A DNA stretch of 63,963 nt, counting the filler, from Octopus bimaculoides (lineage: Eukaryota): the NCBI RefSeq assembly GCF_001194135.2. It is 7 parts of 6 records of this genome, joined end to end, with 100 filler letters (N's around TTAATTAATTAA, not from the genome) between each part and the next. Parts side by side here need not be neighbours in the genome. Positions count along the whole stretch, not along the records: positions 55,108 to 59,956 come from NW_026409336.1; 6 more parts are not named here. One strand, written 5' to 3'. A program made the translations under genes and the position numbers. Positions 35,195-60,539 of this stretch are shown in pieces (position 1 is the stretch's first letter; each line of letters opens with the position of its first letter). The notes under the pieces were generated by a model that saw only the letters and a list, made by a program, of their open reading frames with translations, had not been told where the DNA came from and ran no database searches.

Positions 35195-35415
35195 TATATT
35201 TACTTAAATACATATATAATATAATATAAGGATAAAATCTTTATAAGAATTTATCAAGTAGTCAGCGTGAAAAAACCTCATAAGGAAAAAAAAACCCATC
35301 ATTTTTTTCCATAAATATATATAATATAATTTATATAAGGGCATTACTATATAATAATGCTTCACGCTTAGAGGGACTTTATAAGTCAAAACTACCAAAA
35401 TAAGCACATATTTAT
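35195..35415 (+). repeat. Unclassified AT-rich interspersed repeat (second copy at 58270-58465)
   Basis: Shared tttataagaatttatcaagtagtcagcgtgaaaaaacctca...agggcatta...cacgctt.gagggact. Confidence 0.8.
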
Positions 35416-54060: not shown

Positions 54061-55299
54061 AAAAAAGGAAGAAGGTGATGATTACAAAGTAAACAAAAAC
54101 AAACAAAAAAACAAAAGTGAACACCATTTTAAAATATGTTTAAATGACTGAAAATTATGCAAATAAACAGGGCAATGGCTGGCAAAGTCACAAGAATATT
54201 GGGCAAAATGTTTTGTAGTATTTAGTTACATTAGTTAAAGCACTCCATGGCTTGGGTTCAAATCACACTGCAGTCAACATTTGGTGGTGGTGGGGTTAAT
54301 AAAATAAATATTATTGCAGAACTGGGTTGATCTAATCAACTATAATTTCCACCCCATCCTATCTACCCAAATTTGTGGCATTGTGTTTAGGTTAGAAATC
54401 AATGGCTAGAAATATGAGCATCACAACTCGATTCTCTGACCCTGGCTATATTTCCTCATTGATTTTTATTTTTATGAACAACAAATATGTATTAAACTAG
54501 ATTGGTTATATAATTTATGGATAATAACCACAAATGTAGATATTCACATGAAATATTCAACAGACAGACATAACATCAGAATTGGCTTAAAACTGCAAAA
54601 AAAAAAAAAAAATCAAAAATAAACCCAAAATAAAATGTAAAATTTAGAACCAAAAAACAGGTTAGTAAAAAATATAAATAAAACCAATGCAAAATTACTG
54701 GAACATGCAAAAATCCTAGAAAAGAGCGAAAAAATAAATTAGTGATTATATATTTAAAAAACAAAAATCACATTTGTTTACACTTTTAGATATTTTTTTA
54801 GAACTATGGCCAAGAACTGGAATTTAAAGGTCAAAGCGTGTAGTAGAATATAATAATAAATCAATGATTTTTTTTTCATTATCTATTTATTTATTTGTTT
54901 ATTTTGTGATAATAGGGAATTTATTAACGTGTTTTTTTTTTGCTTGTTACTGCTGTTGTACAGAGCAAGGAGGACTGATTGAGGAAAACAAATCTGGTCG
55001 GTGGTCTNNNNNNNNNNNNNNNNNNNNNNNNNNNNNNNNNNNNNNNNNNNNTTAATTAATTAANNNNNNNNNNNNNNNNNNNNNNNNNNNNNNNNNNNNN
55101 NNNNNNNTGTGTGTGTGTATTTGCGTGTGCGTGTGTGTGCTTCTGTGTGTATGTATTTACTTGCGTATACAGAATTTCACTTTCACATACACATCTAGAT
55201 GTGTATTTACGTACACACGCACACAAACACAAACACACACATACAGACAAATACAGAAAAACACAGGCGCACAAACACAAACACACACGCACATGTATG

Positions 55300-55392
<93 letters not shown>

Positions 55393-55426
55393 ACGTACGC
55401 ATAAATGTATATTGAAAGATAGATAA

Positions 55427-55466
<40 letters not shown>

Positions 55467-55839
55467 AGCGTATTTTTTAGTGCGTGTAAGCGGGCGCTGT
55501 GCGTGTGTGTATGTGTAAATCTCTAGGGTATGTTTTTGTGAGTGTGTCTCTAGTAATTATCTCCATATTCACTTAATGATTTGGAAAGCTGTAGAAGAAA
55601 TTCATATTCTTTTAATTGTATGGTTGGCCCCTTATGATAGTCTGTAAGTTCCATGCCTGGAACTTTCGGATTTTGATTCAGTTTTCTAAATTTTCAGAAG
55701 CAAATAAAGAAAACTGTACCCTCTGCCTTGCTTACCGAGTTCTTCTTCCCTTGATTTCTTTTTTTTTCTTTTTTTTGTCTTTTACTAAACCTTTCTACAA
55801 TATATCATCTACCAACCTGAATATGTGTGTTTATGGCAA

Positions 55840-55883
<44 letters not shown>

Positions 55884-56672
55884 CAACTATATATATATAT
55901 ATATANNNNNNNNNNNNNNNNNNNNNNNNNNNNNNNNNNNNNNNNNNNNNNNNNNNNNNNNNNNNNNNNNNNNNNNNNNNNNNNNNNNNNNNNNNNNNNN
56001 NNNNNNNNNNNNNNNNNNNNNNNNNNNNNNNNNNNNNNNNNNNNNNNNNNNNNNNNNNNNNNNNNNNNNNNNNNNNNNNNNNNNNNNNNNNNNNNNNNNN
56101 NNNNNNNNNNNNNNNNNNNNNNNNNNNNNNNNNNNNNNNNNNNNNNNNNNNNNNNNNNNNNNNNNNNNNNNNNNNNNNNNNNNNNNNNNNNNNNNNNNNN
56201 NNNNNNNNNNNNNNNNNNNNNNNNNNNNNNNNNNNNNNNNNNNNNNNNNNNNNNNNNNNNNNNNNNNNNNNNNNNNNNNNNNNNNNNNNNNNNNNNNNNN
56301 NNNNNNNNNNNNNNNNNNNNNNNNNNNNNNNNNNNNNNNNNNNNNNNNNNNNNNNNNNNNNNNNNNNNNNNNNNNNNNNNNNNNNNNNNNNNNNNNNNNN
56401 NNNNNNNNNNNNNNNNNNNNNNNNNNNNNTATATACATAAACAATATATGAGTATATGCATATATATGTACATGTATGTATATACGTGCATCTACATGTA
56501 CATATAGATACATAACTGGGTACATGACGTGGCAAAAGAACAAGGACAAAATGGTAAACAAGGTGCAACAAACAATCAGGCCACATAGAAACATCCCCTT
56601 CATCAGCTGCCACCATTAAAACTCCGGCGTTTATGAAACACATATACAATTATATACATACATGTATATGTA

Positions 56673-56707
<35 letters not shown>

Positions 56708-56950
56708 GTGTGTGTCATCACAACTTGATTATCGGTGTCGGTTTATTTACGTTTCCGTGACATAACGGGTTCGACTGAAACAGGTTCATTGAAGAAGTAC
56801 GAGGCTGAGGAAAACGAAATAAAATACTAGGGTCGATTTTTTTTTTCTTTTTTTCTTCGATAAAACATTCCAAGGCTGTACCTAGCTTGGTCGCAATCTA
56901 ATGTCAGAAACATGCAAAAGCATGTACAAACACACACACATTCACATTCA

Positions 56951-56994
<44 letters not shown>

Positions 56995-57529
56995 GACTAG
57001 CGCACAGGCACAAACATATTTTCTTACATACATGCATATATATTACATACACGCATAGATACGTTTGTGCAGCGATACATATAATTCAAATTTACTGTTA
57101 CAAGTCATTCAGCGAGTTGAGCAATGTCGTTTTCCGTAGCTAACCATGTCACACATAGCTTTGAGTGAAGCCTGGACAAAACCCCACTAGAACAGTTCTA
57201 GCGGCGGTGGGGGTCACCCTACACTCGATTTGAATACGATCTGACTCGTGCATGGGCTCAACTGTAACTGTCTATCTGCTCAGGCCGTGAAATTTCATTG
57301 TTCGCAAAAGCAATTTTTAGTCTTTGTTTATGAATGTACATGAGTATTTCCGAATAATGAGTATCTGAAATCAGAGATGCGATATTTATTTTAAAAAGGT
57401 ATTAAAGTCTATCTGTACAGACCAAACAAAATGGATTCAAAGTTACACGATCAGGCGAAACGTCTGAATGTGTTACCTCGGCCTGGATATCTTATAATGA
57501 CTGAAGAAGAGAAATATTCTTTTTTAATT

Positions 57530-57835
57530 TTTACTCTAGGCACAAGGTCTGAATTTTTGGGGGAAGGGCCAAACGATTAGACCGACCGCGGTATGCAACT
57601 GGTACTTAATTTATCGACCCCGAAAGGACGAAAGGCAAAGTCGACCTCGGCGGAATTTGAACTCAGAACATAAAGACAGACGAAATACCGCTAAGCATTT
57701 TGCCCGGCGTGCTAACGTTTCTTATTTCTTTATTGCCCACAAGGGGCTAAACATAGAGGTGGGAAAACAAGGACAGACAAAGGGATTAAGTCGAGTACAT
57801 CGCCCGGCGTGCTAACGTTTCTGCCAGCTCACTGC
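57530..57835 (-). mobile_element. SINE C with a nested 79-bp tail insertion
   Basis: 21-bp direct repeat gcccggcgtgctaacgtttct at 57702 and 57802. Confidence 0.85.
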
Positions 57836-58404
57836 TTTAGAACCACGGAAATATTCTTTTCTNNNNNNNNNNNNNNNNNNNNNNNNNNNNNNNNNNNNNN
57901 NNNNNNNNNNNNNNNNNNNNNNNNNNNNNNNNNNNNNNNNNNNNNNNNNNNNNNNNNNNNNNNNNNNNNNNNNNNNNNNNNNNNNNNNNNNNNNNNNNNN
58001 NNNNNNNNNNNNNNNNNNNNNNNNNNNNNNNNNNNNNNNNNNNNNNNNNNNNNNNNNNNNNNNNNNNNNNNNNNNNNNNNNNNNNNNNNNNNNNNNNNNN
58101 NNNNNNNNNNNNNNNNNNNNNNNNNNNNNNNNNNNNNNNNNNNNNNNNNNNNNNNNNNNNNNNNNNNNNNNNNNNNNNNNNNNNNNNNNNNNGTAACAAA
58201 TAAGAATATACGCAAACACTAACACAGATATACCAGTACACAAACACACAACTATATATATTTCTACACATATATTTCTACATAATATAATATAGGATAA
58301 TTTCTTTATAAGAATTTATCAAGTAGTCAGCGTGAAAAAACCTCAAAATGAAAAAATAACGAAAAATGTTCGTAATGAAAAAAATTCATCATTTCATCAT
58401 CAAT

Positions 58405-58516
58405 ATATATACTTATATATAAAGGGCATTAACTGTGTATTAATGCCTCACGCTTCGAGGGACTAAAGCGTGAGGCATTAATACACAGTTAATGCCCTTT
58501 ATATATAAGTATATAT
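58405..58516. repeat. Perfect 51-bp inverted repeat with a 10-nt loop
   Basis: 58405-58455 is the exact reverse complement of 58466-58516. Confidence 0.95.
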
Positions 58517-59011
58517 TTCTACATGTATTTATAGACATTCAGTATATACGCAAGTTTATGTCGCTTCACGCATGCACAGATAGACTGACACGCAAACATA
58601 TGTATATGCGTTTGTATAATACAAAACTTTACACATACATACGTAGTTATGTATGCATATGTGTGTGTGTGTATGTGTGTGTGTGAGTGTGTGTGTGTGT
58701 TTATACACATAATATGCACGTAGATATATGTGTTTATATAAACGCCTGAGAGTTATATACTGTGTTCCTTATAATATGCGTGGATGAATGTATATATGTG
58801 TATATGTATGTATGTGTGTACGTATGTATGTTTGTATGTGTGTATGTATCTATATATCTATTTAACAATATATAAATATATTATATATATGTATGTATGT
58901 AAGCTTGTATATATATTCGTGTATATATCTATACATATATATATATACACATATATACATATATCTGTCTTCTATGTATTTNNNNNNNNNNTATATATAT
59001 ATGATAGATAA

Positions 59012-59078
<67 letters not shown>

Positions 59079-59264
59079 CGAGGAAAAGAGGTTGGAGTTC
59101 CCTTGCCTTCAACTTTACGCATTATTGGACGCTTTTGAGAAGGCATAATCGATTATCTTCCCAGTCAGGTATGGAGTTCAATGTAATCGACTAACACCCA
59201 CCTCGTGCCAAGGATTCGAAACTACATGTTTGATATTAGCCCTTGTGGCCAATAAAACGAATTA

Positions 59265-59332
<68 letters not shown>

Positions 59333-59352
59333 CATCAACATCATTATTATTA

Positions 59353-59640
59353 TTATTTATGGGCTGTACCCATCAAGGTTATCTTTTGTAGTTCAGGGAG
59401 ATTGGAGTTACCAGGGAGTTGCTTAATATAATTATTAACTCCATTCTTTATCATTCCCAACCCACCTATTATTATTGGTATTATCGTAGTATTAAGCTTC
59501 CGCATTTTTTGTGATTTCAATTTGCACATCTTTATAGTGATATAGTTTTCCGTATTCCTTTCTTGAGACATTTTGATCTTTATTGTAGTCCTCGATCACA
59601 ATGTCTGGTCGAATTTTTCTGTCTCGCACATTCGGGCTCG
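59353..59640 (-). mobile_element. R4/Dong-like 3' fragment ending in (TAA)n
   Basis: RPDIVI, then TTIIPIIIGGLGMIK...LQKITLMGTAHK*; the stop codon is continuous with the (TAA)n tract at 59264-59352. Confidence 0.8.
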
Positions 59641-59730
59641 ACAAATTAAGTTCCTTAGTGGAGTCGATGTAATTCAGCTAGTCCCTGCCCCATTTCAGGC
59701 CTTGTGCCTATAGTAGAAAGGATTATTATT

Positions 59731-59774
<44 letters not shown>

Positions 59775-60539
59775 TATTTAACTCTGATTTCAAATTCCGC
59801 CAAGGCTTGTTTCGGGGTCGATGAATTAACCCCCTGTAAAACACTGGTATTGACGTGATGGACTAGTCCCCTCCAAACAAATTTCAGGGCTTATGCGTAT
59901 TTATTTTTCATAGATATAATCCAATTTGCGTACTTATTCTATCAATTTCTATCGTTNNNNNNNNNNNNNNNNNNNNNNNNNNNNNNNNNNNNNNNNNNNN
60001 TTAATTAATTAANNNNNNNNNNNNNNNNNNNNNNNNNNNNNNNNNNNNNNNNNNNNTATATATATATATATATATATATGTACACGAGTGAGTGGAGAAA
60101 CGAAGGAGGGGCACTCCGCCAAATTATTGGGACTTACATGTATAGATCAAAGCAGTTTGATTCATATTCGTTGGTACTCTCGAGTTTGATACCTATATAT
60201 ATATATACCACGGGCTTCTTTTAGTTTCCACTTACAAAATACACTCACAAGGCTTTGGTCGGCCCGAGGTTATAATAGAAGACACTTGCCCAAAGTGCCA
60301 CGCAATGAGACTGAACTTATGTATATACACAGACACACACACGTACACGCACACACTTTCGCACGTGCGTGCACACACACGAAGTAGCTGGGGCATGTCG
60401 CAGCTCTTGAGGGATATCTTATATCATTATTACACTCCAATATGTAGTCTCAGTTGTCGCTGTATATTAGTTCAAAATATATATTAATATTGAGAATTAA
60501 GGAAATGTGATTTGCAGAGATAGTGTATAATAAAAGAGA

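What the first reader, a model, noticed from the sequence alone, without database searches (positions are those of the whole stretch)
58405..58516. De novo perfect 51-bp hairpin formed inside a repeat copy
Seen: atatatacttatatataaagggcattaactgtgtattaatgcctcacgctt - cgagggacta - exact reverse complement. The sister copy at 35195-35415 has only the left arm and loop (agggcatta...cacgcttagagggact) and then continues differently. Zero mismatches imply a very recent fold-back (template-switch) event. Established: template switching can create miRNA-like hairpins in one step, and coleoids have a large expansion of novel miRNAs. Inference: a snapshot of hairpin-RNA/miRNA birth, or a cruciform fragile site.
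Basis: partly seen in the sequence, partly recalled or inferred. Interest (0 to 1): 0.7.

Follow-up and report, generated by a model that had tools for sequence, protein, structure and literature searches.

The report
Perfect fold-back hairpin in octopus repeat DNA
A 112-base stretch of non-coding, repeat-rich octopus DNA is a flawless hairpin that looks like a one-step "copy yourself backwards" polymerase slip at the end of an inserted segment; nothing shows it makes a microRNA, and it still needs confirming in raw reads.

Summary
Arms 58405-58455 and 58466-58516 are 51/51 complementary around a 10-nt unpaired loop (58456-58465). Shuffles of the contig never exceed 16. Pairing falls to chance level (16/40) just outside the arms, so this is one copy event, not a decayed palindrome.

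New here: an exact 14-mer, ATATATTTCTACAT, at 58270 and 58511 brackets a 227-bp segment. The hairpin's right arm is the last part of that segment. The arm's final ATATAT is also the start of the second 14-mer. The net change is therefore a 45-nt inverted copy (58466-58510), rejoined through 6 nt of microhomology.

That geometry fits snap-back or template-switch synthesis. It could have happened during replication, break repair or retroposition; I cannot say which.

I could not test it against other genome copies, other species or reads, because every external route came back empty. An assembly or library artefact (~0.25) and a short MADE1-like palindromic MITE (~0.15) therefore stay open.

The microRNA-birth reading has no support. 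The stem is longer and more perfect than canonical precursors, no Rfam family reaches threshold, and the arm is absent from the published octopus miRNA supplements.

It is an ordinary kind of structural mutation and of modest interest.

The parts
58405..58455 (+). Left arm of the palindrome, the presumed template (source) of the copy. 51 nt, 29% G+C.
58425..58447 (+). Small hairpin inside the arm: GGCATTAA / loop CTGTGTA / TTAATGCC (8-bp stem). It is mirrored in the right arm at 58474-58496.
   Evidence: DNA fold of arm plus loop, z = -3.5; coordinates.
58456..58465 (+). Unpaired 10-nt loop CGAGGGACTA, the turn-around point of the fold-back. No internal pairing (0/5).
58466..58510 (+). Net inserted inverted copy, 45 nt: the part of the right arm that is not shared with the flanking 14-mer.
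   Evidence: inference from overlap of the arm with the 14-mer.
58511..58516 (+). ATATAT. These are the last 6 nt of the right arm and also the first 6 nt of the second 14-mer copy. The sequence is self-complementary, so it is the microhomology at the rejoining point.
58270..58283 (+). Left copy of the exact 14-mer ATATATTTCTACAT (like a target-site duplication). It is preceded by a near-copy at 58256-58269.
58511..58524 (+). Right copy of the exact 14-mer ATATATTTCTACAT, followed by a degenerate copy, GTATTTATAGACAT.
58284..58510 (+). The 227-bp segment bracketed by the 14-mers. It consists of 182 bp of unique A-rich sequence ending at the loop, plus the 45-nt inverted copy. No second copy exists in the piece.
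58193..58981 (.). The 789-bp contig that carries the hairpin. It is bounded by N runs at 57863-58192 (330 N) and 58982-58991 (10 N), so this is a gapped scaffold assembly (the short-read origin is my inference).

Best explanation
The hairpin is the scar of one polymerase fold-back (snap-back or template-switch) event in non-coding, repeat-rich octopod DNA. A strand growing 5'->3' on the + strand reached about 58465. It folded back on itself and copied its own last stretch backwards, from 58455 out to about 58411. It then re-annealed through the self-complementary ATATAT to the sequence that originally followed. The net result is 45 inserted bases (58466-58510), which together with 6 pre-existing bases give perfect 51-bp arms around a 10-nt loop. 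The turn-around point sits at the right end of a 227-bp segment bracketed by an exact 14-bp direct repeat. I therefore think the fold-back most likely happened when that segment was inserted or its break was repaired. [quoted passage not shown] A later replication slip is less likely. Shown: the geometry, the sharp edges, the microhomology and the bracketing repeat. Inferred: the direction, the timing, the enzyme, and that the structure exists in the animal. I see no evidence of any function. The locus is most likely neutral. If transcribed it would be a long perfect dsRNA (a Dicer/ADAR substrate) rather than a canonical miRNA precursor.
For: The arms are perfect at 51/51, the loop is 0/5 and the flanks are 16/40, so this was a single copy event. 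Chance is excluded: shuffles reach at most 16 nt, and the fold z-scores are -19.6 and -21.4. The exact 14-mer lies at 58270 and 58511, and the second copy starts inside the last 6 nt of the right arm. A direct repeat of >=14 nt anywhere in 58193-58640 occurs in only 4/1000 shuffles. The 14-mer ties the right flank to the left flank, which argues that the two junctions belong to one real locus. The geometry matches the published template-switch model, whose miRNA-like hairpin class is defined as stems of 30-55 with a central loop (PMC10710096). It also matches the snap-back SD-MMEJ model: hairpin priming, limited synthesis, then annealing of the nascent end to a microhomology on the other side, so that the insert becomes part of a longer inverted repeat (PMC5728401). 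The piece is octopod: a retroelement-tail ORF hits two Octopus bimaculoides proteins at 72% and 64% identity.
Against: There is no independent evidence that the structure exists. No reads, no second assembly, no orthologous empty site and no other family copy could be obtained. The hairpin lies in a 789-bp contig between N gaps in microsatellite-rich DNA, where misassembly is commonest. The 14-mer is part of a local two- to four-copy motif, so it may be a tandem motif split by an insertion rather than a true target-site duplication. The bracketed segment has no recognisable poly(A) or simple-repeat tail and no identifiable transposon features. By my own recollection, 45 nt is long for Pol-theta/SD-MMEJ inserts. 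The arm core resembles a hairpin family derived from DNA repeats (mir-1641), which points towards a MITE instead.
Confidence: 0.5

Rival explanations
1. Assembly or library artefact. The right arm does not exist in the animal. Fold-back chimeric molecules made during library preparation, or a faulty gap closure, put an inverted copy into a low-confidence contig.
For: The hairpin sits in a 789-bp contig between a 330-N and a 10-N gap, in a piece full of microsatellites. Chimeric reads that join a strand to its own reverse complement are a documented product of sonication and enzymatic fragmentation (PMC10908179). Zero mismatches is what an artefact would give. No independent data could be reached.
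Against: A fold-back chimera has one junction and then keeps running back along the same locus. Here the copy stops after 45-51 nt and continues into a different flank. The overlap there is only 6 nt, too short for a k-mer or overlap join (inference). That flank is tied to the left flank by an exact 14-mer. The documented artefacts are described there as low variant-allele-frequency calls; that they would therefore rarely win a consensus is my inference.
Confidence: 0.25
2. A short palindromic MITE (MADE1- or Stowaway-like). Two terminal inverted repeats flank about 10 bp of internal sequence, the element inserted at a TA-rich site, and it is young enough to be unmutated.
For: The architecture resembles known palindromic MITE-derived hairpins (the MADE1/mir-548 comparison is from my own knowledge). 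The best Rfam match, mir-1641, covers 58420-58501 end to end at 55.9 bits. Arm positions 58423-58448 match its consensus at 21/26 without gaps; the score is 16, against a shuffle mean of 5.9 and a maximum of 13 in 20,000. mir-1641 is reported to derive from DNA repeats (PMC4233971). A TA, TATA or TATATA duplication is compatible with the TA runs in the arms (sequence).
Against: After allowing for about 4,000 families, the 21/26 match is only borderline (my estimate, E about 0.03-0.05). The bit score is far below the gathering score of 104, and microsatellite palindromes nearby score higher. If the element ends where the mir-1641 similarity ends, the outer 17-19 nt of each arm, including CTT/AAG, would have to be a target site that was already perfectly palindromic over 28-32 nt. 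No direct duplication exists outside the 51-bp arms. No other copy is present in the piece. The 14-mer bracket suggests a larger, asymmetric inserted unit.
Confidence: 0.15
3. A working small-RNA locus: a newborn miRNA or a hairpin-RNA/endo-siRNA gene, whatever its mutational origin.
For: The RNA hairpin is very stable with a 10-nt loop. Template switching is documented to have created miRNA hairpins (PMC10710096). Octopuses gained 90 novel miRNA families whose source is unknown (PMC9699675).
Against: The stem is a perfect 51 bp, against a strong preference for about 35 bp. No family reaches Rfam's threshold. The arm strings are absent from the supplements of the octopus miRNA survey, which also required presence in a second species. 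There are no expression data, and the context is intergenic or intronic repeat debris with no visible gene.
Confidence: 0.04

Closest known systems
Template-switch mutations (TSMs) that create hairpins in one step (Loytynoja and co-workers; PMC10710096, PMC8794818)
   Same: There is a contiguous reverse-complement copy of adjacent sequence, perfect base pairing and a central loop. The stem length falls within their 30-55 class. The return to the original template is at a microhomology.
   Different: Their calls rest on a reconstructed ancestral sequence from related genomes, and none is available here. The turn-around coincides with the end of a bracketed inserted segment, which a random replication slip would not predict.
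Snap-back synthesis in SD-MMEJ / polymerase-theta end joining (PMC5728401, PMC4912351)
   Same: A 3' end folds back, primes limited synthesis on its own strand, unwinds and anneals to a microhomology across the break. The insert becomes part of a longer inverted repeat.
   Different: By my recollection the reported inserts are mostly a few to a few tens of nt, and 45 nt is at the long end. No break or repair context can be shown here.
5' end rearrangements of target-primed retroposition (L1 twin priming / 5' inversions, microhomology-mediated 5' attachment; inverted partial copies of Penelope-like elements). From my own knowledge, not tested.
   Same: The direct repeat bracketing the insert is of a typical variable length (14 bp). 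An inverted piece lies at one end of the insert. There is microhomology at that junction.
   Different: Twin priming inverts a neighbouring part of the RNA rather than duplicating the same 45-51 nt. No poly(A) or repeat tail, reverse-transcriptase remnant or family consensus could be identified for this segment.
Palindromic MITEs that give miRNA hairpins (MADE1/mir-548, from my own knowledge; mir-1641, derived from DNA repeats, PMC4233971)
   Same: The overall shape is two about 35-50-nt inverted arms around about 10 nt. There is a 21/26 match of the arm core to the mir-1641 consensus.
   Different: The score is well below the family threshold (55.9 against 104 bits). No clear target-site duplication was found. 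The palindrome extends 17-19 nt beyond the similar part. No other copies are known.
Fold-back chimeric reads from library preparation (PMC10908179)
   Same: A strand is joined to its own reverse complement with perfect identity.
   Different: Those have a single junction, are reported there at natural inverted repeats or palindromic sequences, and were described as low variant-allele-frequency calls. Here there are two junctions, and the sequence returns to a flank linked to the left flank.

Membership tests
Canonical animal miRNA gene | Precursor hairpin with a stem of about 35 bp, usually with bulges, and an apical loop of >=10 nt | tested here: not met
   The stem is 51 bp with no mismatch or bulge. 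Only the 10-nt loop fits (criterion from PMC10710096).
Canonical animal miRNA gene | Membership of a described family (Rfam gathering score) | tested here: not met
   The best match is mir-1641 at 55.9 bits against a gathering score of 104. Other miRNA models give 38-40 bits on the same hairpin, and microsatellite palindromes in the piece give up to 58.9.
Canonical animal miRNA gene | Small-RNA reads from both arms with 2-nt 3' offsets and a homogeneous 5' end | not testable with these tools
   No read data are available. The arm strings are absent from the 10 supplementary files of PMC9699675, which is only weak negative evidence.
Canonical animal miRNA gene | Presence in a second species (the criterion used for octopus novel families) | not testable with these tools
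   No cephalopod genome is reachable. Criterion from PMC9699675.
Template-switch mutation hairpin | A contiguous reverse-complement copy of nearby sequence, explained by one switch-and-return path | tested here: met
   The copy is 51/51 with sharp edges. The path is: leave at about 58465, copy 58455 back to about 58411, return at ATATAT 58511-58516.
Template-switch mutation hairpin | An ancestral or outgroup sequence that lacks the inverted copy | not testable with these tools
   The sister copy is outside the piece, and no related genomes or family copies were retrievable.
Template-switch mutation hairpin | Not mainly simple repeat (<50%), stem of 30-55, loop in the central third | tested here: met
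   About 17 of the 51 arm bases are TA-rich (my count by eye; I did not run dustmasker, the tool the cited criterion uses). The stem is 51 and the loop is exactly central (criteria).
Snap-back SD-MMEJ / TMEJ templated insertion | An inverted templated insert next to the junction, plus microhomology where the nascent end rejoins | tested here: met
   The insert is 45 nt and the shared ATATAT is 6 nt (model).
Snap-back SD-MMEJ / TMEJ templated insertion | A primer repeat (short inverted microhomology) at the fold-back point | tested here: inconclusive
   Any primer repeat is now buried in the inner end of the arms (CTT/AAG) and cannot be told apart from copied sequence.
Retroposed insert (target-primed reverse transcription) | A target-site duplication of variable length flanking the insert | tested here: met
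   The exact 14-mer lies at 58270 and 58511; p is about 0.004 for such a repeat anywhere in the region. Caveat: the motif is locally repeated.
Retroposed insert (target-primed reverse transcription) | A 3' poly(A) or simple-repeat tail and a recognisable LINE/SINE body | tested here: not met
   Neither end of 58284-58465 has a tail. There is no tRNA-like head, no Rfam hit and no protein homologue.
Palindromic MITE (MADE1/Stowaway-like) | Terminal inverted repeats | tested here: met
   This is trivially met by the palindrome.
Palindromic MITE (MADE1/Stowaway-like) | A target-site duplication directly outside the inverted repeats | tested here: inconclusive
   There is none outside the 51-bp arms (flanks ...CATCAAT and TTCTACA...). 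Only self-complementary TA, TATA or TATATA inside the arms could serve.
Palindromic MITE (MADE1/Stowaway-like) | Many dispersed copies that carry both arms | not testable with these tools
   The piece holds only this copy. The metagenome and viral scans were empty.
Library/assembly fold-back artefact | Supported only by chimeric or soft-clipped reads, with abnormal depth | not testable with these tools
   No reads are available.
Library/assembly fold-back artefact | A single inversion junction, after which the sequence retraces the same locus | tested here: not met
   After 51 nt the sequence leaves the retraced path, with only 16/40 complementarity beyond, and enters a flank linked to the left side by the 14-mer.

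The most novel reading that the evidence does not exclude
The hairpin is real, arose by snap-back of a nascent strand at the end of a retroposed or repaired insert, is still polymorphic in the population, and is transcribed and diced. It would then be a caught-in-the-act example of how insertion-coupled fold-back supplies the raw hairpins behind the large, unexplained gain of small-RNA genes in coleoid cephalopods.
Probability: 0.04. Interest if true: 0.65.

Novelty: new member of a known kind. Interest (0 to 1): 0.25.

Why it matters
If real, it is a clean single-locus example of a one-step inverted duplication in which all four switch points can be read. It occurs in a lineage whose source of many new miRNA families is unknown (PMC9699675). 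It would show that such hairpins can arise at the ends of inserted segments, not only at replication slips. On its own, without reads, outgroups or small-RNA data, it is a neutral-looking structural mutation of a well-described type, or an assembly error. Its main practical value is as a test locus for read-level validation of perfect palindromes in this draft assembly.

Tried and rejected
1. Exact-product look-ups of five ORFs in and around the hairpin, and of the two O. bimaculoides homologues, were meant to fetch the same locus or other octopus contigs. None is on record.

2. A protein search with the 56-aa open frame across the left flank, arm and loop, meant to catch translated family copies, found no candidate.

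3. Exact DNA scans found nothing: the arm core in metagenome contigs, arm plus loop with one wildcard in metagenome contigs, and the arm core in viral contigs. I did not scan the bacterial/archaeal genome collection or the phage, plasmid and E. coli collections, because they cannot contain cephalopod repeats.

4. A sensitive blastn of 58240-58470 against the whole piece found no second copy of the unique part, only low-complexity hits.

5. Rfam at E<=10 gave only sub-threshold miRNA-model hits. These are driven by perfect pairing; microsatellite palindromes score as high. The mir-1641 similarity was examined separately and is borderline after multiple testing.

6. ARAGORN found no tRNA-like head in the piece. 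Pfam found nothing on the retroelement-tail ORFs.

7. The octopus genome paper, wanted for the assembler's k-mer size so I could ask whether 51 equals k, is not held in the library. That check could not be made.

8. Considered and set aside:
- A Helitron 3' end: the sub-terminal hairpin is present, but its spacing and the flanking bases do not fit.
- A hAT-type 8-bp duplication: the flanks are inverted, not direct.
- A hammerhead ribozyme or Penelope-like signature: no Rfam hit.
- An excision footprint with P nucleotides: by my recollection these are far shorter than 45 nt.

Full report
**What is there**

The piece (55108-59956) is non-coding and very rich in microsatellites. It is interrupted by three N runs: 55906-56429, 57863-58192 and 58982-58991. 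The hairpin lies in the 789-bp contig 58193-58981.

- Left arm 58405-58455.
- Loop 58456-58465, CGAGGGACTA.
- Right arm 58466-58516, the perfect reverse complement, 51/51.

**Is it more than chance?**

- In 300 dinucleotide-preserving shuffles of the contig, the longest perfect inverted repeat with a spacer of up to 30 nt was 7-16 nt. With the right arm removed, the next best in the real sequence is 11 nt.
- As RNA it folds at -81.1 kcal/mol (z = -19.6). As DNA it folds at -55 kcal/mol (z = -21.4).
- Complementarity is 51/51 in the arms, 0/5 in the loop and 16/40 outward of the arms.

The sharp edges mean a single copying event, not an old palindrome in decay.

Each arm carries its own small hairpin: GGCATTAA-CTGTGTA-TTAATGCC at 58425-58447.

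More important is the 13-mer ATATATTTCTACA, which occurs three times: at 58256, 58270 and 58511. The exact 14-mer ATATATTTCTACAT occurs at 58270-58283 and 58511-58524. The second 14-mer begins inside the last six bases of the right arm.

A direct repeat of 14 nt or more anywhere in 58193-58640 appears in only 4 of 1000 shuffles. Its position exactly at the palindrome's outer edge is a further coincidence.

Three things follow:
- A 227-bp segment (58284-58510) is bracketed by an exact 14-bp direct repeat.
- The segment consists of 182 bp of unique A-rich sequence ending at the loop, plus a 45-nt inverted copy (58466-58510).
- The final ATATAT of the 51-bp arm is self-complementary and belongs equally to the flank. 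It is therefore a 6-nt microhomology at the rejoining point.

Joining the flanks in a script gives a plausible empty site: three diverged copies of the motif in tandem.

**Mechanism**

Read 5'->3' on the + strand, the structure is what a polymerase makes in four steps:
1. It reaches about 58465.
2. It folds back.
3. It copies its own product from 58455 out to about 58411.
4. It re-anneals through ATATAT to the sequence that originally followed.

This is the geometry of template-switch mutations. That literature defines a miRNA-like class with stems of 30-55 and a central loop (PMC10710096). It is equally the geometry of snap-back synthesis in SD-MMEJ: hairpin priming, limited synthesis, unwinding, annealing of the nascent end to a microhomology across the break, with the insert ending up as part of a longer inverted repeat (PMC5728401).

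The turn-around coincides with the end of the bracketed segment. I therefore favour formation at the time that segment was inserted or its break was sealed. Candidates are snap-back of a cDNA 3' end on reaching the end of its template in target-primed reverse transcription, or end-joining synthesis. This step is inference. The segment has no tail, no tRNA-like head, no Rfam match and no protein homologue, so its class and orientation are unknown.

**Source organism**

The 72-aa ORF at 59353-59571 (-) hits two Octopus bimaculoides uncharacterised proteins at 72% and 64% identity. The piece therefore comes from an octopod. Neither ORF has a Pfam domain.

**Could it be an artefact?**

The setting is the kind where assemblies err: a short contig between gaps, surrounded by microsatellites. 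Fold-back chimeric molecules are a documented product of library preparation (PMC10908179).

Against this, such chimeras have one junction and then retrace the locus. Here the copy stops after 45-51 nt and continues into a different flank. The overlap is only 6 nt, too short for a k-mer or overlap join. That flank is tied to the left flank by the 14-mer.

I could not learn the assembler's k-mer size, because the genome paper is not held. Without reads the question stays open. I put the artefact at about 0.25.

**Could it be a MITE?**

The best Rfam match is mir-1641, over 58420-58501, at 55.9 bits against a gathering score of 104. The arm core 58423-58448 matches its consensus at 21/26 without gaps. 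The score is 16, against a shuffle mean of 5.9 and a maximum of 13 in 20,000. mir-1641 is said to derive from DNA repeats (PMC4233971).

Allowing for about 4,000 families, this is borderline (my estimate, E about 0.03-0.05). Microsatellite palindromes in the same piece score 58.9 bits on other miRNA models.

A MITE ending where the similarity ends would need a target site that was already a perfect 28-32-nt palindrome. No direct duplication lies outside the 51-bp arms. I keep this rival at about 0.15. It is decided by a genome-wide copy census, which I could not run.

**The miRNA reading**

Octopuses did gain 90 novel miRNA families of unknown source (PMC9699675), and template switching has produced miRNA hairpins in primates. 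So the idea is legitimate in general.

For this locus nothing supports it:
- The stem is a perfect 51 bp, against a strong preference for about 35 bp.
- No family threshold is met.
- The arm strings are absent from the survey's 10 supplementary files.
- That survey required presence in a second species.
- No gene or transcript evidence is available.

If transcribed, a 51-bp perfect duplex is a better substrate for Dicer-type siRNA production or ADAR editing than for Drosha. That last point is from my own knowledge.

**What could not be done**

Every route to other copies, other assemblies or reads was empty:
- Seven exact-product look-ups.
- One protein search with the arm-spanning frame.
- Two metagenome scans and one viral scan.

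**Verdict**

The best explanation is a single fold-back copy of 45 nt at the end of a bracketed 227-bp segment, real in the genome with a probability of about one half. No function is indicated. It is a new example of a known kind of mutation. It is of modest interest unless reads, population data and small-RNA data show that it is real, young and processed.

Noticed in passing
window 59353-59644 (-): Two adjacent ORFs (59492-59644 and 59353-59571) in different frames look like the C-terminal tail of a retroelement protein (RPDIVI......IIGGLG......LMGTAHK). The 72-aa one hits two Octopus bimaculoides uncharacterised proteins at 72% and 64% identity. There is no Pfam domain. It is probably a frameshifted retroelement remnant.
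   Followed up: partly
window 57530-57830 (+) and about 59690-59900 (-): These are SINE-like repeat copies in opposite orientation (GGCACAAGG.CTGAA.TT...GGGG head...CGACCCCGAAA...GGCGGAATTTGAA... body). In the first copy the 21-mer GCCCGGCGTGCTAACGTTTCT occurs twice, exactly 100 nt apart (57702 and 57802), which suggests a partial internal duplication or two abutting copies.
   Followed up: no
window 55239-55396: A large microsatellite quasi-palindrome, CA-rich / (TA)n / TG-rich: 79-nt arms, 78% complementary, no spacer. It gives the highest sub-threshold Rfam scores in the piece (mir-5014 at 58.9 bits, mir-1277 at 56.7), which shows how easily palindromic low-complexity DNA mimics miRNA models.
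   Followed up: partly
window 56676-56715 and 56926-56994: (GT)20 and (AC)34 arrays face each other as an imperfect inverted pair about 210-250 nt apart, flanking a unique segment. I have no explanation for this arrangement.
   Followed up: no
window 59003-59078, 59265-59357, 59731-59774: Long clean microsatellites: (GATA)19, (ATT)31 and (ATC)15. The last two abut the SINE-like and retroelement remnants.
   Followed up: no
window 58423-58448: The arm core AGGGCATTAACTGTGTATTAATGCCT matches the Rfam mir-1641 consensus at 21 of 26 positions without gaps. mir-1641 is a chicken/reptile hairpin (taxa from my own recollection) reported to derive from DNA repeats. This may be chance, or a trace of a widespread DNA-transposon terminal repeat.
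   Followed up: partly
window 58334-58383: A 23-nt imperfect direct repeat lies inside the bracketed segment: GAAAAAACCTCAAAATGAAAAAA and GAAAAATGTTCGTAATGAAAAAA, 27 nt apart. Its meaning is unknown.
   Followed up: no
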